Source: Octopus bimaculoides
Lineage: Eukaryota
NCBI RefSeq assembly: GCF_001194135.2
Contig: NC_069001.1
Coordinates: forward strand, 24,611,977-24,675,009
Length of the DNA: 63,033 nt
Direction of reading: 5' to 3'
Position numbers and translations under genes: made by a program. A model generated the notes under the pieces. That model did no database searches. It was given only the letters and a program-made list of their open reading frames with translations, and was not told the origin of the DNA. Positions within the stretch are counted from its first letter, which is position 1, and every line of letters begins with the position of its first letter. Shown here piece by piece: positions 2,379-46,896 of this stretch.

Positions 2379-3075
2379 NNNNNNNNNNNNNNNNNNNNNN
2401 NNNNNNNNNNNNNNNNNNNNNNNNNNNNNNNNNNNNNNNNNNNNNNNNNNNNNNNNNNNNNNNNNNNNNNNNNNNNNNNNNNNNNNNNNNNNNNNNNNNN
2501 NNNNNNNNNNNNNNNNNNNNNNNNNNNNNNNNNNNNNNNNNNNNNNNNNNNNNNNNNNNNNNNNNNNNNNNNNNNNNNNNNNNNNNNNNNNNNNNNNNNN
2601 NNNNNNNNNNNNNNNNNNNNNNNNNNNNNNNNNNNNNNNNNNNNNNNNNNNNNNNNNNNNNNNNNNNNNNNNNNNNNNNNNNNNNNNNNNNNNNNNNNNN
2701 NNNNNNNNNNNNNNNNNNNNNNNNNNNNNNNNNNNNNNNNNNNNNNNNNNNNNNNNNNNNNNNNNNNNNNNNNNNNNNNNNNNNNNNNNNNNNNNNNNNN
2801 NNNNNNNNNNNNNNNNNNNNNNNNNNNNNNNNNNNNNNNNNNNNNNNNNNNNNNNNNNNNNNNNNNNNNNNNNNNNNNNNNNNNNNNNNNNNNNNNNNNN
2901 NNNNNNNNNNNNNNNNNNNNNNNNNNNNNNNNNNNNNNNNNNNNNNNNNNNNNNNNNNNNNNNNNNNNNNNNNNNNNNNNNNNNNNNNNNNNNNNNNNNN
3001 NNNNNNNNNNNNNNNNNNNNNNNNNNNNNNNNNNNNNNNNNNNNNNNNNNNNNNNNNNNNNNNNNNNNNNNNNNN

Positions 3076-3153
<78 letters not shown>

Positions 3154-4089
3154 GGAGATCCATTGTGTAACATCCCTTTACAACAAAAAGTAACTTAACT
3201 ATTCAATAAAGTGAAATCAATAAAATAATTAACAATCTACGCTTATGAATAATAATTAAATTCGTTCCTGACGTTGGCAATTTAGCACAAAATGTAAGAA
3301 ATTCATGCAATTTAGACCATGGATGCACGTGTTGTCAAATGCAGTGAACAAACCTCACTTAAAGCATCCTGAATCATATTGGAAACAGAAGGGCACACTT
3401 CATAATATAGTCCTAGATATTCATTTACCGAGTGACTTATATGACTAGAAAGCCTTTGATCAGACTGCTCATGTGGTGCTGACCTGGGGTTAAATAACTA
3501 TAGCAAAAACAGTAACTACTCTGCATTCTTTATGAAACCTGGTTTCATTTACACTTAAAATATGAACTTCAAACTGATGATAATGTGTTTGTGCTTTGAT
3601 ATGTCTGTTTGTGAGTCTGAGATGAGGTAATTCTTTTCTTGCGCTAAGCAAGAGGAAGAATTAAGAAAAGGAAATTCTAAATGTGGAAATACTGACCTTG
3701 GCCCACTAAAATACCTATAAATCAAGAATCGAGAAACAATAGGTCTCCTTAAGGACAAACAAAAATAGACGGCAAAAGATAAATCCCAACGATGAGATGG
3801 TAATGGTCTCAAACATGGCAATCATAAACTTCCTTAATAAAGAATATGAAAACAACATTTCAAAGATAGATTATATAATACATGAAACAGTCCCTCTGGT
3901 TACAACGAAAAGTGGTTATCACTCAGACACATTTATCTTAAGAGGTATGTCATAACCGAAACAAGCAACATCGAAAAATATATATTCAGACTTGGTGGTG
4001 TCATAAGAAGTTTGCTTCGCAACCACATTGTTCCAGGTTCAGTCCCACTGCATGCAACTTTGGGTTGTGCCTTCTGATTTAATCCCGGA

Positions 4090-4470
4090 TGCGTGCATCT
4101 CTGATCACGAGCAGAAGGGGTGGGCGAGTATCATAGCCACGTGTTGAGAGGAATCCTTTGGAGTTTGATTAATTCACCTCTGGAAACATGGATGTTTCGT
4201 TCCTCATCCTTAAACAAACATCATTCGGAGACCTTTTGAGCAAGTTGAGCTACTCAACCTGAAGAAAATTCTAACTGGGCCCCACCTACAAGGTAAGGCG
4301 CTGTCTATGTTGATATGAGATCACACTGTCGCGCACATATGGTTGTGATGCATGTGTCTGGTGTACCTTTACCAGACGGGTAGTCATGATGGGTATAATG
4401 GGCTTCGTATATTTTATCGCAGTGTCACTTTGATGGCACGCGTTACTCACTCACTCACTAACAATAATAG
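4090..4470 (+). mobile_element. Non-coding retroposon (family T) with decayed (TAA)n tail, 5' truncated
   Basis: Reverse complement of the repeat at 36695-37236. Ends cagtgtcactttgatggcacgcgttactcactc followed by aacaataatagtgataat. Confidence 0.75.
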
Positions 4471-4529
4471 TGATAATGATGATATTGATGATGATGATAA
4501 GGAGGAGGATGAAGATGATGATGATAAAC

Positions 4530-4680
4530 CGTTTTAGATAGGCATAAGCTTTAAGTTTGTAGAGGGTTGAATCGATTGCATCGACCCCAGTTCTCCAACA
4601 CTGGATTGATAGAAGTCAAAGTGGACCTCGTCGGAATTTGAAATTAGAACATGAAGACAGATGAAGTGTCGCTAAGAGGA
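4530..4680 (-). mobile_element. SINE family A, degenerate
   Basis: tcgattgcatcgaccccag...aaagtggacctcgtcggaatttgaa matches the reverse complement of family A. Confidence 0.7.
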
Positions 4681-5257
4681 TGAAGGTCGTCGAAACCCTT
4701 GAATAAAGTATTTGACTAGTATTCTATTGACACTCTCAAGACGAATTGCAAATTTGACTCCGGCGTTATTTGAACTCAGGTGTTAATGAGCCGGAACAAA
4801 TAATGCAAGTCATTTTGTCCAGAGCTAGAACAATTCTGCCAATCAAACCAATGAGTATTATATTCAAGCAGCCATTAGACACTAGATTCATATCTCTGAC
4901 TGTCCTAGAGGGGGCTCAATTTTCTGGTTGATAATCCGGAAGATAGATGAAAAGCTAATAAATTTTACACTGCATTAGCTGGTGAATTAAAAGAGTTTGG
5001 CAGTCAAAGGATGTTTCTCAGTTTTTAATTGATGCAACTGCAATGATAGACATCCACTTCTATAAATACAGTCGTATATTACCTATAACAATAGACATAG
5101 GCATGTTACCGAAAATAGCAATATAAGAATCTATAAATAATATTACGGCATTCTCATGCGACAATGATATGCTTGTTTTCCAAGATGTAGCTAGTTATTG
5201 ATTTACGAAGAGACACTTGATCTAATTCCCAAGCCAATAAATAATGAAGGGCGATTC

Positions 5258-5408
5258 TTCTTCTTCTTCTTCTTCTTCTTCTTCTTCTTCTTCTTCTTCT
5301 TCTTCTTCTTCTTCTTCTTCTTCTTCTTCTTCTTCTTCTTCCTCCGTCTCGTCTACTGCTTCACCTCCTCTTCCTCCTCTTCTTCGTTCTCTTCTTCTTC
5401 TTCTTCTT

Positions 5409-5492
<84 letters not shown>

Positions 5493-5495
5493 TTA
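5258..5495. repeat. Compound (TTC)n(TTA)n microsatellite next to an assembly gap
   Basis: Direct reading of the sequence. Confidence 0.95.
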
Positions 5496-6127
5496 TGTTT
5501 GACNNNNNNNNNNNNNNNNNNNNNNNNNNNNNNNNNNNNNNNNNNNNNNNNNNNNNNNNNNNNNNNNNNNNNNNNNNNNNNNNNNNNNNNNNNNNNNNNN
5601 NNNNNNNNNNNNNNNNNNNNNNNNNNNNNNNNNNNNNNNNNNNNNNNNNNNNNNNNNNNNNNNNNNNNNNNNNNNNNNNNNNNNNNNNNNNNNNNNNNNN
5701 NNNNNNNNNNNNNNNNNNNNNNNNNNNNNNNNNNNNNNNNNNNNNNNNNNNNNNNNNNNNNNNNNNNNNNNNNNNNNNNNNNNNNNNNNNNNNNNNNNNN
5801 NNNNNNNNNNNNNNNNNNNNNNNNNNNNNNNNNNNNNNNNNNNNNNNNNNNNNNNNNNNNNNNNNNNNNNNNNNNNNNNNNNNNNNNNNNNNNNNNNNNN
5901 NNNNNNNNNNNNNNNNNNNNNNNNNNNNNNNNNNNNNNNNNNNNNNNNNNNNNNNNNNNNNNNNNNNNNNNNNNNNNNNNNNNNNNNNNNNNNNNNNNNN
6001 NNNNNNNNNNNNNNNNNNNNNNNNNNNNNNNNNNNNNNNNNNNNNNNNNNNNNNNNNNNNNNNNNNNNNNNNNNNNNNNNNNNNNNNNNNNNNNNNNNNN
6101 NNNNNNNNNNNNNNNNNNNNNNNNNAT

Positions 6128-6492
6128 ATATATTTGTAAGTCCTGGTGTTTTTGTTATGTATTTGTCTGAATATTTTTTTATCATACCTAAGGCGCCTAC
6201 TCAAATAGAAATTGTTTCTGTTTTTAGATTCCACATTCGAGTTATCTCTATTTCTAGGTCTTTGTATTTTGAAAGTTTCTCCATTTCTTTTAGGGAAATG
6301 TTGTCATCTGCTGGTATTGATACATCAATTAGAAAGAATTTTTTTCTTCATGATCTCTGACAACTATATCTGGCCTATTGGCCTTAATTTCTCTATCAGT
6401 GTGTATTGGCATATCCCAGAGTATGGTTGCTTTCTCGTTTTCTGTGACCTTTTCTGGAGTGTGCCTATACCATCTTTTTTCTGTTGTTAGCT
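6128..6492 (-). mobile_element. R4/Dong-clade non-LTR retrotransposon fragment (RLE domain), decayed
   Basis: Minus strand reads KRWYRHTPEKVTENEKATILWDMPIHTDREIKANRPDIVVRD...FLIDVSIPADDNISLKEMEKLSKYKDLEIEITRMW...GALGMIKK, with the PD..D..K restriction-like endonuclease motif and a frameshift and stop. Confidence 0.85.
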
Positions 6493-7370
6493 TCTAAAGC
6501 TGGAAATGTACTGCGGTGTCAGCTGTTCACTATCAGTGAACTAAGGTAACAACCCTTATTTTTCGAACACCATCCGGTTTATTCAAGCGATTTCAAGCAG
6601 TGCTGTTTTCTACAAGCGCTCCCCACTTATTGCAGCCCCTATTTGTTCCACGTACTTCTCAAGATTTTTGATCACTAAGCCCGACAATTATTGGTACTAC
6701 TACCACCATTTACAGTGACTACAATTGCTTAACCTCTCAAGCTAACATATCATATCTATCGACTTTTCTTTCTTCCTTATCGCACACCTTGTTGTCAGCT
6801 GGGCGTGCTATATCTATGATACAGCATCGTTCGATTTCTTTCTCAATTAACACTATGCTTGGTTTCCTATTCTCTATCTCATGGTCGCACTGAATCATAA
6901 AATCTCATAGAATCTTTCCATTATCATTTTCGATGATGCCTTCGAGTTTGTGTTCATACCACTTGTTTGCTCTGTCAAGTCCATACTTGTTGCAAAGTGT
7001 CAAATGAACAATCCTTGCTGTTATCATTACGTCTCTTATATTCTTTCTGAGCTAGTGGCGTACATTGACTGGTAATATGACAAACGGTTTCACAAATTTG
7101 TCCCCAAATTTGCACTTATCACTTTTTAATGTGTTTTCTATTCTGTATTTGATGTATTTGTTTCTTAATGCTTGCTCTTGGGCAGCACAGATTAGAGCCT
7201 GCGTTTCCGGTTTTCAGTCACTGTTGGTCACCCACAGCCATCTTTTTTCTCTGTCTGTCTGAAATTGTCTATGCATTCTTTTCTTTATCCACCTATTTTC
7301 AGTTTCATTCATTCTGAAGTGCTTGTGCAATGCTTTGTCTTCGCAATCTTCTATCCTACACAATTTATAA
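6493..7370 (-). mobile_element. Second, distinct R4/Dong-clade fragment (post-RT, CCHC remnant, RLE, 3' end)
   Basis: Minus strand reads KPETQALICAAQEQALRNKYIKYRI...HITSQCTPLAQKEYKRRNDN.ARIVH...WYEHKLEGIIENDNGKIL*DFMIQCDHEIENRKPSIV...IIDIARPAD. Confidence 0.85.
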
Positions 7371-25512: not shown

Positions 25513-26497
25513 TTAATAAAGATCAAGACGAGCAACATTCAGTCTTTTAGGCAGGGTAATCCCTGCAGCCCGGATTTTACATTTTGTGATTAATTTGACT
25601 TTTGCACATACCAAGCGGTGGTCAGTCCAACACTCAGCTCCACGAAAAACACGAACACACCGCACATCACGTCTGTCACGCATCCTAACAAGGATGTAAT
25701 CCAGAATATGCCACTCTTTAGATGCAGGGTGCATCCATGTGGTCTTAAACTTATTCTTTTGCTGAAACATGGTATTGGCAACACACAGACGCAGCTCCTC
25801 GCACATCTGCAGCAGAAGCATACCATTACTATTACACTTTCCCACCCCATGCTTTCCAATTACTGTCCATGTGTTAAAATCCCTACCCACTCTAGTATTA
25901 AAGTCACCCAGTACGATGACTTTGTCTGCCCTAGGGATGTTTCTTATAATGCCCTTCAAAGCANNNNNNNNNNNNNNNNNNNNNNNNNNNNNNNNNNNNN
26001 NNNNNNNNNNNNNNNNNNNNNNNNNNNNNNNNNNNNNNNNNNNNNNNNNNNNNNNNNNNNNNNCTCACCAAGGTCACATAATTTCCTTTAACCAAAGGAA
26101 TTCTCATGGACATAAGCCGCTCATTAATCCCGACTGGGAATTCTTCCAACATGTCCACAAGAGTAAGTCTTAACAGCAAATGCCACTCCAGCCTCTCCTC
26201 TAAGCTCTTCATCTCTCCCTTTCCAAAAGAATGTATATCTTCCACAAGATTCTGTAAGATGACCATCTCCAGCCAGTCTCGTCTCAGACAAAGCAACGAT
26301 ATCAAGATCATAGCGTCGAAGCTCCTTCGCAAGAAGAGCAGTCCTGCGTTCAGGACATTCTGAGGACTTGCGGTCAAGCAGTGTCCGTACATTCCAACAG
26401 CCAATATTCAGTATTTTATTTGGTTCTATCACAGTAGCATGATGACGGCCGGGTTCAGACTGTGATGCTTTGGATACCCTACCGGGCCAGACGCTTT
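25513..26497 (-). mobile_element. RTE/BovB-like LINE 5' portion: APE endonuclease, frameshifted, RT absent
   Basis: IGCWNVRTL...RRTALLAKELRRYDLDIVALSETRL...YTFFWKG...GVAFAV; ERLMSMR; LGDFNTRVG...GVGKCNSNG..LL; TWMHP.SK.WHILDYILVR; WTDHRLV. Frameshift near 26170 and a gap at 25964-26063. Confidence 0.92.
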
Positions 26498-26631
26498 CAT
26501 CTGATGTGGTTAAATAGACTACAGCAACGTCAGTTGAAAGTGCTTTGCTTAAGAAGACAACGTATTGCCGGGTGAAGCATTTCTTACGTTCGTGAATTCA
26601 ATACCCTAACTTCTAAGTCACGCGCCTCCAC
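26498..26631 (-). mobile_element. Decayed family D SINE head (tRNA + CORE-like) directly upstream of the RTE fragment
   Basis: Minus strand gtggaggcgcgtgacttagaagttagggtattg...gttgtcttcttaagcaaagcacttt...gttgctgtagtc aligns by eye with 23148-23290. Confidence 0.7.
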
Positions 26632-30439: not shown

Positions 30440-31239
30440 AGGAAACGCTTTTAATTCATATAATTTCTTAATCTCTCTAACAATCAAAATTAGTTTACAC
30501 ATGTAAATTAATGCATCTTATTACGCTTAGTAATAGTGGGTTTATATTAAATATCTCTATAAATAAACAGGTTGCCCCGGCGAGATGACAATCTCGCCCT
30601 ATTTTACATTCTGTACTCTTTATTTGCTGTGTAAAAAGAGAAGTTTTCTATATCTACACATACATAGCGTTGGTTAGATACTATTCATATATTCAATGGC
30701 AGAGTTTATCATTAAAACAAAACGCTGATGGCACACAAGTAATTTATTAATGAAACTAGTTGTCGAATACTTGTTATGCAAATCGGTCTATTCGATTTAT
30801 TGAAGCTCTTAGCAATAGTGGCTGTATAAGAAATATCTCTATTGATAGATAAAACTGCTAATCAGTCACTGAAGCATTGAAACTATTTAGGTTAAACTAA
30901 CATTTAGCTCTTCAAGGATATCGTACAAAAATAGTGACAGCATCTGTTTGTGAATAAAACTCATAAATACTCTCTGTACTACCGTATGTTTAAACATATA
31001 CATACTGTCCTTGTCTAACTCTCTAAAAGCATTTAATTAATGATATCAAGAGTAAGTTGTCTGGTACTTATTTCATGGTTCTCGTACGGTACGAAATTAC
31101 ATTACCATAAATTGTGAAAATTTAGTGAGACTGATATAAATGCATTGAATAATATAAATAGTGGATGAGATTTCCAAGAGCCTCCATCTCTTTCGAGAAG
31201 AAACGTTTGTAAAATTATTTGTGTGGACTAGATATGGCT

Positions 31240-31355
31240 TCGTTGGAATAAGTACTAGGCTTATAAGTACTAGGCTTATAAGAAATAAGTCCTGGGGTCG
31301 ATTAGTTCGACTAAAGGCGGTGCTCCAGCATGGCCGTAGTCAAATGACTGAAACA
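31240..31355 (+). mobile_element. SINE family C 3' fragment
   Basis: ataagtactaggctt (duplicated)...ctaaaggcggtgctccagcatggccgtagtcaaatgactgaaac. Confidence 0.8.
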
Positions 31356-32477
31356 AATATAGGAGTAACCTGAGGCTAGAACAGAAGTGCTGTATTATGA
31401 GATCAAACGCGGAACCACGCAGTTACAAAGCACATTTTTAACCACACACATTCGTGCGCCTAGTGATATCTTGAACTAATGAGCATGTAACTTACAAAAT
31501 TCTAATTAAAACAACGAAGCCGTATCTTGTCCACGCAAATAATTTTATAAACGTTTCTTTATTTTTTAATGTAATCAAATCGTTTTCGGAGAGTCACCTA
31601 CAAGTTTGTTACTATTTTTGGAGAATAAATCTTATCTGCGTGTTTTGGATCACTAATTCATATGATTTAAATTTAATACTCATTAAAAGAAATGTCTTGT
31701 AGTACAGAACTAGTGAAGGGAAACGAGATATCGTTAACAATTTTATTCCACATTCATTCCTCTGTTTCTGTCGTCTTTTTGCAAACTTATCCGACTGCTG
31801 ACGTTGAGGAGATTGAAATTTAACTTGGAGTTTTACAGCTTGATGTTTCGTAAGTAAAAGGTCAGGATTATATGGCTTTGCAAAGAGTTCTGGTTGTAAG
31901 AACAAAATACTGAACAAATACTTCAATCTGGAATGTATGTGGGACTGAGTAAAGATTATAATGAGAGAAGTGACAAACGCAACAAATGGAATGAAGTGGA
32001 GAAATTATAGTGATTGAAACACATCTCGAGTGTAGGTTAGTGTCTTTCTTTTAAAGTTCCCAGCCATCCTTGGTAGAGTAGAGCACTAGCTTAGCAGCTG
32101 TGATAACTACTGCTATGTATGTTGAAGATATTCTATTACGGCAGAATGGAAGAAACAAAGGAAACTTCCTTAAACTTCACAAATAATTTACTGTAACAAG
32201 AAGCAGATACGAGTTCAGCAACAGTATGCTTCATGTGAAGCAGTACATAAATGTGAGAAGTTACATACGAATTGGTCTTGTCGCATTCCGTGTGGGAAGA
32301 AGTATGAGAGAATTTCGTGCGGCTATAGGTTCGCTAGTAGAGTAAGCGCAAACCTTAGACTTGTCGTGTAACATGAGTAGCTTGCCACGAGCAGTTGCTA
32401 CTAGAAACCATTTCTGTAGTTTACGCCACGTGTAGGAATTACTGAATTGCTGGAGGCGCCACCTAGAAAACGAAATC

Positions 32478-32492
32478 TTTCTAGAATGTTCT
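32478..32492. promoter_or_regulatory. Heat-shock element (three inverted nGAAn units)
   Basis: tTTCtaGAAtgTTCt is a perfect HSF consensus. Confidence 0.65.
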
Positions 32493-32537
32493 ATGCCATA
32501 CTGGCTTTACTAGAAGAAACGTAGACCCGCTGTCCCT

Positions 32538-32557
32538 AGAACATTCTGGAACGTTTG
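32538..32557. promoter_or_regulatory. Heat-shock element (three perfect units plus one imperfect)
   Basis: aGAAcaTTCtgGAAcgTTTg. Confidence 0.65.
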
Positions 32558-32653
32558 TCAAGGGAGGTCACCGATGTTGAATCCCCTGGCTTTCGGAGGC
32601 CTGCAAATAGAGAAATGACAGGATCTGTTTTAATTACGTCATACCTACATGTC

Positions 32654-32659
32654 TATAAA
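32654..32659 (+). promoter_or_regulatory. TATA box
   Basis: cTATAAAt, about 97 bp downstream of the second HSE. Confidence 0.45.
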
Positions 32660-32807
32660 TTTAGTAGCGATACGGATACAATAAGAGAATTTGAGAGATT
32701 GTAAAGTCTCATGTTCGTTGGTCACACCCAGTGAGATTCAGCGCTGTAAAACCTATATTCTATATCTTGCCGGAGTGACTGAAACTTAATATTATTTAAG
32801 CGACAAA

Positions 32808-32939
32808 ATGCTATGTATTCAGTGGGGGATAATTTTGATGTTTTGCTTCAGGAGTTTAGAGAAAATTTACCCTGATGTGTTCAGTACGGAATATATCCGT
32901 TTGGGTGATAGCTATGTGCAGATTACTCTCTATGTCTGA
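32808..32939 (+). CDS. Candidate 43-aa small ORF downstream of HSE/TATA
   Basis: acaaaATG context; MLCIQWGIILMFCFRSLEKIYPDVFSTEYIRLGDSYVQITLYV*. The stop TGA overlaps AATAAA (32939-32944). Confidence 0.25.
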   Translation: MLCIQWGIILMFCFRSLEKIYPDVFSTEYIRLGDSYVQITLYV

Positions 32940-32984
32940 ATAAATGTACATAGGTGTAAATGAGAATAGGTATAACCATTAATT

Positions 32985-33372
32985 GTTGTTGTTGGCACTC
33001 CGTCGCTTACGACGTCGAGGGTTCCAGTTGATCCGATCAACGGAACAGCCTGTTCGTGAAATTAACGTGCAAGTGGCTGAGCACTTCACAGACACGTGTA
33101 CCCTTAACGTAGTTCTCGGGGATATTCAGCGTGACACAGTGTGACCAGGCTGACCCATTGAATTACAGGCACAACAGAAACAGGAAGTAAGAGTGAGAGA
33201 AAGTTGTGGTGGAAGAGTACAGCAGGGTTCACCACCACCCCATGCCGGAGCCTCGTGGAGTTTTAGGTGTTTTCGCTCAATAAACACTCACAACATCCAG
33301 TCTGGGAATCGAAACCGCGATCCTATGACCACGAGTCTGCTGCCCTAACAACTGGGCCATTGCGCCTCCACA
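32985..33372 (-). mobile_element. SINE family B, well-preserved copy
   Basis: Head gtggaggcgcaatggcccag and (AAC)n tail. Matches 1670-2052. Confidence 0.9.
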
Positions 33373-33814
33373 TAACCTCTAACAAATGTACAAATACTAA
33401 TTAATTAACAACAAATTAATCTATGCAACCACACACACACAGATATAAAGATAACATAACCTTGATGTCTAAAACCATATGAAGTTAGCAAATAGATAAA
33501 TGAGGACATGTGTTAACTAGACTTTGCATGAGTCATGTTTTTATAAATATTAATTTTAAGACCTTGGATATTTTTAATGTAACATTCAGACTTATTAAGA
33601 AAAATTTCAATCGCATACTAAACATGTTTCAATACTATATCCAGCAATAAAGTAAACAACTTCCCGTATATTCTTTGAACTCTCGTTCATGACTAGTGTA
33701 AAACTTTGCAATAAAATGTCATTACAGATGTATGTATATATATATGTGTGTGTATATGTGTGTGTATATGTGTGTGTATATGTGTGTATACATGTATATT
33801 CTCTTTTATACTTT

Positions 33815-34020
33815 TATTCTTTTACTTGTTTCAGTCATTTGAGTGCGGCCACGCTGGAGCACCACATTAAAAGGTTTTAGTCAAAGAAATCGACACCGGT
33901 ACTTATTCCTTGTAAGTCTAGTACTTATCCTATCTGCCTCTTTGGCCGAACCACTAAGTTACAGGGACATAAACATACCAGCATCGGTTGTCAAGCGATG
34001 ACGGACGGGACAAACCCAGG
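33815..34020 (-). mobile_element. SINE family C 3' part
   Basis: Reverse complement of the 14300-14455 tail, continuing into (TACA)n/(TG)n/(TA)n. Confidence 0.85.
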
Positions 34021-34036
34021 CACACATATACATACA

Positions 34037-34067
<31 letters not shown>

Positions 34068-45957: not shown

Positions 45958-46896
45958 TATTGGATTGGCAACTAAGTTCCCACTCTTTTTTAAAATCTTA
46001 ATTTTAAAAAAAAGTTTTAATAAAAAATAACTAATTAATCAATAATGTATTCACCCTTGTTGTTTACAACTTCTTCCCAACGTTCAACAAGATTTTCAAT
46101 ATCTCGTTGATAGAAATCACCCGATTTCGACTCGAAAAATTGATCCAAGTTCTCAATCCTGCATCAGTACTGAACGAAACTCCGCGCATAGCATTTGAAA
46201 GAGATCGAAAGAGGTGGAAATCCGTTGGTGCCAAATCAGGAGAGAACGGTGGGTGTGGCAGCACTTCCCAGCCATGCGTTGGAATGGTTTCCCTGGTCAT
46301 ATTGGCGATATGAGGACGGGCGTTGTGGTACAGCAGAAGAACTCCATGTTGACGATTAGGTCTTTTCTCTTGAATAGCCGTGTTGAGTGGTTCCATCTGT
46401 TGAACATAGAGTTCCGTGTTGACCGTTTGGTTGCGTTCAGCAATTCGTAATGGATAATCCCTTCCCAGTCCCACAATATGCACAACATTGTTTTACACGG
46501 ATGAAGACTTTGTTTCACGCGCGGTGTCACTTGTTTGAGGTCAAAATTTCATTACTAATCACAAGCGGTTCTTTCAGCTATGGCACCCTCTCCATACACA
46601 ACACAAATGTCGCGAGCAGCTGTTGCGGCCTTAGAACCTTGATTAAAAGCAAAAAGAAGGATGTGTCAAAAATGCTCGTTTTTCTTAACTTGACATTCCA
46701 TTTTAATTATCTGAAAATATACAAGAATTAACTGAAATTAAGTAGAACAAAAATAAATAAATAAACAAAGTAGATTCCAATATTATTCAAAAATAGAATT
46801 CTCGAACAAAAAAAAAAATAGATTCCAAAATTTAAAAACGCAATAAATTTCAAGATTAAAAAAGAAAAAACCGGGAACTTAGTTGTCAACGCAACT
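45958..46896 (-). mobile_element. Mariner (Tc1/mariner) element, internally deleted and frameshifted
   Basis: TIRs tattggattggcaactaagttccc (45958-45981) / gggaacttagttgtcaacgcaact (46873-46896). Reads MLCILWDWEGIIHYELL, LLYHNARPH and WEVLPHPPFSPDLAPTDFHLFRSL. Confidence 0.95.

What the first reader, a model, noticed from the sequence alone, without database searches (positions are those of the whole stretch)
32280..32944. Compact heat-shock-type transcription unit with no recognisable HSP: 2 HSEs + TATA + 43-aa ORF + AATAAA
Seen: two perfect HSEs 45 bp apart (near mirror images), TATAAA about 97 bp downstream, an ATG in CAAAATG context, a 43-codon ORF with a hydrophobic N-terminus and a stop overlapping AATAAA, all in a unique GC-richer island that also has CCACGTG and a partial CTCF-like GCGCCACCTAG. 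Established: this HSE-TATA layout typifies HSF-induced genes, and HSEs work in both orientations. Inference: a stress-induced micropeptide or lncRNA gene, possibly bidirectional with the 32067 ORF, or the orphaned promoter of the decayed frame at 34.5-35.8 kb.
Basis: partly seen in the sequence, partly recalled or inferred. Interest (0 to 1): 0.7.

Follow-up and report, generated by a model that had tools for sequence, protein, structure and literature searches.

The report
Paired heat-shock elements, no provable gene
Two textbook binding sites for the heat-shock transcription factor sit side by side in a gene-empty, repeat-flanked stretch of an octopus-like genome, which makes it a fair candidate stress-responsive switch, but the "mini-gene" drawn behind them consists of signals that occur by chance all over this window.

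Summary
Only the heat-shock-element (HSE) part exceeds chance. The two perfect three-unit HSEs (32479-32491, 32539-32551) are the only ones in 63 kb. Such a pair within 100 bp arose in 0-0.3% of simulated windows. They lie in the window's densest CTAGAA/TTCTAG cluster (6 in 150 bp, never reached in 500 simulations).

The two sites are arms of one imperfect palindrome, so they may share a single origin. TATAAA, the 43-codon ORF, its hydrophobic start and AATAAA are all background-level here. The ORF has no credible homologue. No HSP or other host-gene exon was detected nearby, and no Rfam family matches.

No transposon boundaries and no second copy were found in the window. Genome-wide copy number, conservation in other cephalopods and expression could not be tested, because no cephalopod DNA or RNA data were reachable.

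Best reading: a candidate HSF-binding regulatory module (orphan promoter or enhancer, confidence about 0.4). If it is transcribed, the product is more likely a short non-coding RNA than a micropeptide. Neutral chance sequence and a transposon-borne HSE promoter remain serious rivals. Interest is low to moderate.

The parts
32479..32491 (.). HSE1: perfect three-unit heat-shock element TTCtaGAAtgTTC (extended Pelham-type box CTAGAATGTTCTAT at 32481-32494)
   Evidence: one of only two perfect trimers in 63 kb
32539..32551 (.). HSE2: perfect three-unit heat-shock element GAAcaTTCtgGAA (extended box CTAGAACATTCTGG at 32536-32549); a partial fourth unit TTT lies at 32554-32556
   Evidence: sequence read
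32474..32556 (.). Imperfect palindrome whose 20-nt arms (32474-32493 / 32537-32556, 17/20 complementary) carry the two HSEs, with a 43-nt spacer. By my count, 8 of the 11 arm positions that the HSE consensus leaves free also match, which suggests one origin by inverted duplication.
   Evidence: I1; DNA fold of 32455-32575 has z = -2.9; position-by-position comparison
32401..32541 (+). Cluster of five plus-strand CTAGAA hexamers (starts 32401, 32463, 32481, 32510, 32536) plus one TTCTAG (32479). These are extra HSE-type half units around the two perfect HSEs.
   Evidence: positions; 6 in 150 bp; the maximum in 500 order-3 Markov simulations was 5, reached once
32426..32432 (.). CCACGTG (palindromic E-box core CACGTG)
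   Evidence: CACGTG occurs 12 times in the window, so it is not informative alone
32456..32466 (+). It is present, but I did not test it as a CTCF site.
32634..32641 (.).
   Evidence: this 8-mer and its reverse complement occur 5 times in the window
32654..32659 (+). TATAAA, a candidate core promoter 103 bp downstream of HSE2. No Inr or GC box and only one CCAAT-type match (ATTGG at 32271) in 32000-33000.
   Evidence: the background rate is 1.17 per kb per strand
32711..32734 (+). Upstream ATG with a 7-codon uORF between the predicted start site (about 32685) and the 43-codon ORF
32808..32939 (+). 43-codon ATG ORF (MLCIQWGIILMFCF...) including the TGA stop. It is probably not a gene.
   Evidence: its length and hydrophobic start are at chance level; no exact record; no homologues
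32939..32944 (+). AATAAA overlapping the stop codon, followed by CA and a GTGT-containing stretch. It is a plausible but unremarkable poly(A) signal.
   Evidence: the background rate is 1.57 per kb
31560..32980 (.). The roughly 1.4-kb stretch that is single-copy within the window and contains everything above. It is bounded by a 48-bp inverted-repeat structure on the left and a SINE-like repeat on the right.
   Evidence: self-BLAST

Best explanation
The region is a candidate binding module for heat-shock factor (HSF). It lies in an intergenic, repeat-flanked, apparently gene-free part of an octopus-like genome. Two canonical three-unit HSEs in inverted orientation, 60 bp start to start, sit among further CTAGAA half units.

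Proposed mechanism (inferred, not shown): on proteotoxic stress, HSF trimers bind the two HSEs cooperatively. They then recruit Pol II either to the TATAAA 103 bp downstream, or in an enhancer-like, direction-independent way. Use of the TATA box would give a short unspliced transcript of about 270 nt, from roughly 32685 to a cleavage site just after AATAAA at 32939.

The product would most likely be non-coding, that is an orphan promoter or eRNA-type transcript. The 43-codon ORF is most likely accidental.

Shown: the motifs, their statistical excess, the absence of a recognisable gene, RNA family or intra-window repeat.

Inferred: HSF binding, transcription and transcript boundaries.
For: - The two perfect HSE trimers are the only ones in 63 kb and lie 47 bp apart.
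- A pair this close arose in 0/700 and 2/700 simulated windows.
- The densest CTAGAA/TTCTAG cluster of the window is here, and no simulation reached it (0/500).
- Both sites carry the extended CTAGAAnnTTCT form.
- The single TATAAA within 32000-33000 lies on the correct strand and side, with a CRE-like TTACGTCA 12 bp upstream of it.
- The same HSE-palindrome-plus-TATA layout acts as the upstream region of gag in an unrelated retroelement family (L002, L004, L005). This shows that the motif arrangement recurs upstream of a coding region elsewhere.
- HSF1 is known to drive non-coding targets, including enhancers, NEAT1 and satellites (review PMC9032817).
Against: - No expression, occupancy or conservation data could be obtained.
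- About 0.2% of windows would carry such a pair by chance. That implies on the order of 100 chance pairs in a genome of a few gigabases (my extrapolation).
- The two HSEs also match at positions the consensus leaves free (my count: 8 of 11). They may therefore be one event, an inverted duplication, rather than two independently selected sites.
- No chaperone or other gene lies downstream.
- There is no Inr or GC box and no CpG or GC signature of a promoter.
- TATA, ORF and AATAAA are at background frequency.
- In well-studied genomes most good HSE matches are not bound in vivo (my knowledge).
Confidence: 0.4

Rival explanations
1. This is neutral sequence with no function. A single chance HSE-like site was doubled by a small inverted duplication in AT-rich, GAA/TTC-rich intergenic DNA. 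The TATA, ORF and AATAAA are background motifs that a motif-minded reader assembled into a gene.
For: - A single perfect HSE is expected about 0.8 times per window.
- The arms match at non-consensus positions too, consistent with duplication (sequence).
- The TATA, ORF, poly(A) signal and hydrophobic start are all at chance level.
- There are no homologues, no nearby gene and no promoter-like CpG or GC signal.
Against: - The extra CTAGAA units outside the palindrome arms (32401, 32463, 32510) are not explained by one inverted duplication.
- The cluster exceeded all 500 simulations.
- The TATA box and CRE-like site are on the expected side.
Confidence: 0.33
2. This is part of a multicopy transposable element that carries its own heat-shock-type promoter. 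It could be a solo LTR (U3 with HSEs and TATA, R with AATAAA) or a non-autonomous element, in the manner of ONSEN in plants or HSE-carrying Helitrons in C. elegans. The element would be unique in this window only because the window is small.
For: - HSEs, TATA and AATAAA within about 470 bp is the layout of an LTR (my knowledge).
- The metagenome scan turned up a Ty3/gypsy-type element (L002) with a palindromic HSE array 26 bp upstream of TATAAA, ahead of gag-pol. The array appears again downstream of pol, and related copies are L004 and L005.
- The island is embedded among SINE, LINE and mariner debris.
Against: - There is no second copy in 63 kb.
- No convincing TG...CA termini with a target-site duplication, and no TIR with one. 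The best candidate has a 5-bp duplication but only 3/8 terminal symmetry, which is the chance expectation for the number of pairs tried.
- No gag, pol or transposase signal lies within 13-44.6 kb apart from an unrelated LINE fragment.
- None of the island's ORFs match any protein.
- There is no DNA homology to the L002 family beyond the motif.
Confidence: 0.22
3. This is a stress-induced micropeptide gene. The 43-residue product, with its hydrophobic N-terminus, is translated from a heat-induced mRNA.
For: The ATG lies in CAAAATG context, the ORF is intact, and the stop overlaps AATAAA.
Against: - The ORF length is at chance level: 12% of all ATG ORFs in the window are at least this long.
- 7.5% of such ORFs have an equally hydrophobic start.
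- An upstream ATG with a 7-codon uORF precedes it.
- There is no exact record and no homologue in 5.8 billion proteins.
- The only hit in the exhaustive HMMER search is a duplicated unit of a prokaryotic tandem repeat.
Confidence: 0.03

Closest known systems
Classical HSF-dependent heat-shock promoters (Drosophila hsp70 or human HSPA1A type)
   Same: Multiple canonical HSEs made of alternating nGAAn units, including the CTnGAAnnTTCnAG form, lie upstream of a TATA box. The sites work in either orientation. An ATF/CRE-like site lies near the TATA box.
   Different: No chaperone or any recognisable coding sequence follows. The proximal HSE is about 103 bp from the TATA box, further than the roughly 15-70 bp typical of hsp70 promoters (my knowledge). 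Induction has not been shown.
HSF1-driven non-coding loci: Drosophila hsr-omega, human SATIII, NEAT1, and HSF1-bound enhancers producing eRNAs (review PMC9032817)
   Same: HSEs without a protein-coding target. The expected product is a non-coding RNA. The enhancer class is short, unspliced and often bidirectional.
   Different: hsr-omega and SATIII are built on tandem repeats, and this island has none. There is no sequence similarity to any Rfam family. No transcript evidence is available.
Transposable elements carrying HSEs in their promoters (ONSEN/ATCOPIA78 LTRs, C. elegans Helitron HSEs, and the gypsy-type L002 family found here)
   Same: A compact HSE cluster, TATA box and poly(A) signal lie within a few hundred bp. 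The palindromic HSE arrangement is shared with L002.
   Different: No LTR or TIR ends, no target-site duplication, no coding partner and no second copy in the window. There is no homology to L002 beyond the motif.

Membership tests
HSF-regulated (heat-shock) promoter | At least three contiguous, alternately oriented nGAAn units (an HSE) | tested here: met
   Two perfect trimers at 32479-32491 and 32539-32551. The pair is rarer than chance.
HSF-regulated (heat-shock) promoter | HSEs positioned within a few hundred bp upstream of a core promoter | tested here: inconclusive
   TATAAA lies 103 bp downstream on the plus strand, but TATAAA occurs 1.17 times per kb per strand. No Inr was found.
HSF-regulated (heat-shock) promoter | HSF occupancy and heat-inducible transcription | not testable with these tools
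   No cephalopod RNA-seq, ChIP or ATAC data are reachable.
HSF-regulated (heat-shock) promoter | A downstream chaperone or stress-protein gene | tested here: not met
   Pfam on ORFs of at least 50 aa from 13 to 44.6 kb. Homology search of ORFs of at least 27 aa, plus strand 32.6-39.2 kb and minus strand 26.9-32.5 kb. tblastn of six HSP/ubiquitin queries over the whole window. All were negative. A positive control hit an Octopus vulgaris protein.
Solo LTR or LTR-retrotransposon promoter with HSEs | TG...CA termini with short terminal inverted repeats and a 4-6 bp target-site duplication | tested here: not met
   Only 3 candidates, with poor terminal symmetry (at most 3/8), which is the chance expectation.
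Solo LTR or LTR-retrotransposon promoter with HSEs | Multiple dispersed copies in the genome | not testable with these tools
   No copy in the 63-kb window. No cephalopod genome could be searched.
Solo LTR or LTR-retrotransposon promoter with HSEs | Adjacent gag/pol or a primer-binding site | tested here: not met
   No retroelement domains within 26.5-44.6 kb. The right flank is a SINE-like repeat. I did not search explicitly for a primer-binding site.
MITE or foldback DNA element | Terminal inverted repeats flanked by a target-site duplication | tested here: not met
   Best 12-nt TIR pairs had 1-2 mismatches and a flanking duplication of at most 2 bp. The HSE palindrome itself has no flanking duplication (sequence).
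Micropeptide (smORF) gene | An ORF conserved as a protein, or longer than chance | tested here: not met
   12% of ATG ORFs in the window are at least 43 codons. No homologues.
Micropeptide (smORF) gene | Evidence of translation | not testable with these tools
   No Ribo-seq or proteomic data are available.
Known structured or non-coding RNA family | A match to an Rfam covariance model | tested here: not met
   No match at gathering scores over the window, and none at E <= 1 over 31500-33500.

The most novel reading that the evidence does not exclude
A lineage-specific, single-copy, HSF-driven orphan gene in octopus. It would be a roughly 270-nt heat-inducible transcript (lncRNA or 43-residue micropeptide) with its own HSE-CRE-TATA promoter and poly(A) signal, unrelated to any chaperone. 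That would make it a cephalopod counterpart, in logic, of hsr-omega.
Probability: 0.07. Interest if true: 0.55.

Novelty: new member of a known kind. Interest (0 to 1): 0.25.

Why it matters
If the module really is HSF-responsive, it would be one of the first non-chaperone HSF targets pinpointed in a cephalopod, and it could serve as a compact natural heat-inducible promoter for cephalopod transgenesis. It would also add an invertebrate example to the growing list of HSF-driven non-coding loci.

If it is chance or transposon-borne, it is a useful calibration case. In an AT-rich genome, a TATA box, a 40-50-codon ORF and AATAAA add almost nothing to a motif-based gene call. Only the HSE cluster carries information.

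Tried and rejected
1. Exact look-up of the 43-aa product and of two larger window ORFs in public assemblies: not on record. Raw ORFs of this genome are not indexed, so no orthologous DNA could be fetched.

2. Concatenated six-frame ORFs of the island and of both flanks against 5.8 billion proteins: no hits. The positive control with LINE and mariner ORFs worked, and its top hit was an Octopus vulgaris protein.

3. Exhaustive HMMER search with the peptide: one hit at E = 1e-4. I rejected it. The protein is an ORF read across a 141-bp tandem repeat in a prokaryotic assembly, so the same unit is scored twice. There is no DNA similarity to the island.

4. Solo-LTR, MITE and TIR boundary searches: nothing beyond chance.

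5. HSP remnants by Pfam and by tblastn with HSP sequences written from memory: nothing.

6. CpG-island-like promoter signature: absent.

7. Rfam at gathering scores and at permissive thresholds, and ARAGORN: nothing.

8. Metagenome pattern scan for the HSE palindrome: 5 contigs, none homologous to the island. They serve as an analogy only.

9. Literature search for octopus HSEs: nothing specific.

10. Pfam scans of 0-13 kb and 44.6-63 kb were not run. Those parts are covered only by the HSP tblastn.

Full report
**Context.** The window is eukaryotic and octopus-like.
- It has 22 assembly gaps and abundant microsatellites.
- It carries SINE-like repeats, one directly to the right of the finding at about 32981-33396.
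- It has a LINE endonuclease fragment at about 25.5-26.6 kb. Part of it matches Pfam Exo_endo_phos weakly (E = 4e-4, below the curated cut-off).
- It has a mariner-type transposase remnant at 46064-46492.
- When the LINE and mariner ORFs were searched together, the best database relative was an Octopus vulgaris hypothetical protein with an endonuclease domain, at 78% identity.
- No tRNA gene and no Rfam family was found.

**1.
- HSE1 is TTCtaGAAtgTTC at 32479-32491.
- HSE2 is GAAcaTTCtgGAA at 32539-32551.
- TATAAA is at 32654-32659.
- The ATG at 32808 lies in CAAAATG context.
- The 43-codon ORF ends with TGA at 32937-32939, overlapping AATAAA at 32939-32944.
- CCACGTG is at 32426-32432 and GCGCCACCTAG at 32456-32466.

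**2. What exceeds chance?** Only the HSE part.
- The two perfect trimers are the only ones in the window, where about 0.8 is expected.
- Two of them within 100 bp arose in 0/700 order-1 and 2/700 order-3 Markov simulations of the window.
- The region 32401-32551 also holds 6 of the window's 34 CTAGAA/TTCTAG hexamers. That is the densest cluster in the window and was not reached in 500 simulations.
- A caveat applies. The HSEs are the arms of a 20-nt, 17/20 inverted repeat (DNA fold z = -2.9). By my count, 8 of the 11 arm positions that the HSE consensus leaves free also match. The pair may therefore be one duplicated site rather than two independent ones.
- At about 0.2% per window, a genome of a few gigabases would hold on the order of 100 such pairs by chance. 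This figure is my extrapolation.

**3. What does not exceed chance?**
- TATAAA occurs 1.17 times per kb per strand and AATAAA 1.57 times per kb.
- 12% of all ATG ORFs in the window are at least 43 codons long.
- 35 of 120 TATAAA sites have such an ORF starting 60-300 nt downstream, and 6 of 120 also have AATAAA at the stop.
- 13 of 174 such ORFs start with an equally hydrophobic 14-mer.
- The 'island' is only mildly GC-richer, at 41% against 36%, and 8 of the 63 1-kb bins reach 41%.
- Its CpG observed/expected ratio of 0.94 is below the window's 90th percentile.
- No Inr or GC box was found, and only one CCAAT-type match (ATTGG at 32271).

**4. Is there a gene?** None was detectable.
- The exact 43-aa product is not on record.
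- All six-frame ORFs of at least 28 aa across about 31.8-33.0 kb found no relative among 5.8 billion proteins.
- All non-repeat ORFs of at least 27 aa on the plus strand of 32.6-39.2 kb and the minus strand of 26.9-32.5 kb also found none.
- The database does contain octopus proteomes, as the positive control shows.
- Pfam found no host-gene domain in ORFs of at least 50 aa from 13 to 44.6 kb.
- A tblastn with HSP70, HSP90, DNAJB1, HSPB1, HSPE1 and ubiquitin, using sequences written from memory, found nothing below E = 1.6 anywhere in the window.
- The exhaustive HMMER search with the peptide returned one hit at E = 1e-4. It is an ORF read across a 141-bp tandem repeat in a prokaryotic assembly contig. 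The same unit is counted twice, and there is no DNA similarity. I treat it as spurious.

**5. Is it a transposon?** This is not shown, and it cannot be excluded.
- The stretch 31560-32980 has no second copy in the window.
- Searches for LTR-type ends (TG...CA with a target-site duplication) or TIR-type ends gave only chance-level candidates.
- Genome-wide copy number could not be tested, because no tool reaches cephalopod DNA.
- One analogy emerged. A pattern scan of metagenome contigs for the HSE palindrome found an unrelated Ty3/gypsy-type retroelement family (L002, L004, L005).
- In that family, a palindromic array of five overlapping perfect HSEs lies 26 bp upstream of TATAAA and about 270 bp upstream of gag. 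The array appears again after pol.
- That family is not homologous to the octopus island. It does show that mobile elements use exactly this layout.

**6. Bidirectionality.** No TATA-like motif lies on the minus strand between 32000 and 32479. The minus-strand ORFs there are 32-37 codons. This idea has no support.

**7. Most likely mechanism.** I commit, at about 0.4, to a candidate HSF-binding cis-regulatory module.
- Cooperative binding of HSF trimers to the two inverted HSEs and the neighbouring half units would recruit Pol II.
- The outcome would be either use of the TATA box, giving a transcript of about 270 nt ending after AATAAA, or enhancer-type transcription.
- The product would be non-coding. 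This matches the known class of HSF1-driven non-coding targets (review PMC9032817).
- The rivals are neutral sequence containing an inverted duplication (0.33), a transposon-borne HSE promoter (0.22) and a true micropeptide gene (0.03).

**8. Comparison and novelty.** The region works like a heat-shock promoter or an HSF-bound enhancer.
- Membership of the promoter class is met for the HSE criterion.
- It is inconclusive for core-promoter placement.
- It is not met for a downstream stress gene.
- It is untestable for occupancy and induction.
- At most, this is a new member of a known kind.

**Verdict.** Interest is 0.25. The decisive data are copy number and conservation in cephalopod genomes and heat-stress transcript mapping. 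Both are straightforward but out of reach with the tools available here.

Noticed in passing
L002:7251-7800 (also L002:2313-2347, L004, L005): A metagenome contig carries a Ty3/gypsy-type retroelement: gag with a CCHC knuckle at 6111-7274 (minus) and a 1202-aa pol at 2476-6084 (minus). Its upstream region holds a palindromic array of five overlapping perfect HSEs, 26 bp before TATAAATAAA. The array recurs after pol. This looks like a heat-shock-promoter retrotransposon family in an unidentified eukaryote.
   Followed up: partly
window 32981-33396 (minus strand): A SINE-like repeat directly abuts the finding. I read it as tRNA-derived, although ARAGORN finds no tRNA. At least 3 related copies are in the window.
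   Followed up: partly
window 31198-31559: 48-bp inverted repeats (31198-31245 and 31512-31559, 92% identical) enclose a segment (31263-31368) that belongs to a repeat family with 4 copies in the window, including 33788-34052. This is a possible foldback or MITE-like insertion bounding the island on the left.
   Followed up: no
window 25513-26600 (minus strand): A LINE endonuclease fragment split by an assembly gap at 25964-26063. Part of it gives a weak, sub-threshold Pfam Exo_endo_phos match (E = 4e-4). An Octopus vulgaris hypothetical protein with that domain was the top hit (78% identity) of the combined LINE-plus-mariner query.
   Followed up: partly
window 46064-46492 (minus strand): A mariner/Mos1-type transposase remnant (139-142 aa ORF). 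The best mariner-type database hits are 72-81% identical to the matching part of the combined LINE-plus-mariner query (SETMAR-like names).
   Followed up: partly
window 32634-32641: A CRE/ATF-like octamer TTACGTCA lies 12 bp upstream of the TATA box. It adds a little to the promoter-like look of the region.
   Followed up: partly
window 32836-32852: A strong 3' splice-site-like sequence (tgatgttttgcttcag|G) sits inside the 43-codon ORF. If it is used, the ORF as drawn would not be the reading frame of a mature mRNA.
   Followed up: no
L006:6472-7212: A prokaryotic assembly contig has a called 246-aa 'protein' that is a read-through of a 141-bp tandem repeat (2.4 copies). It lies about 1 kb from groES/groEL. 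It produced the only, spurious, hit to the octopus ORF.
   Followed up: yes
window, whole: There are 22 N-gaps totalling 5.7 kb, many flanked by (TA)n, (CA)n or (TATG)n microsatellites. No host protein-coding exon was detected between 13 and 44.6 kb.
   Followed up: partly
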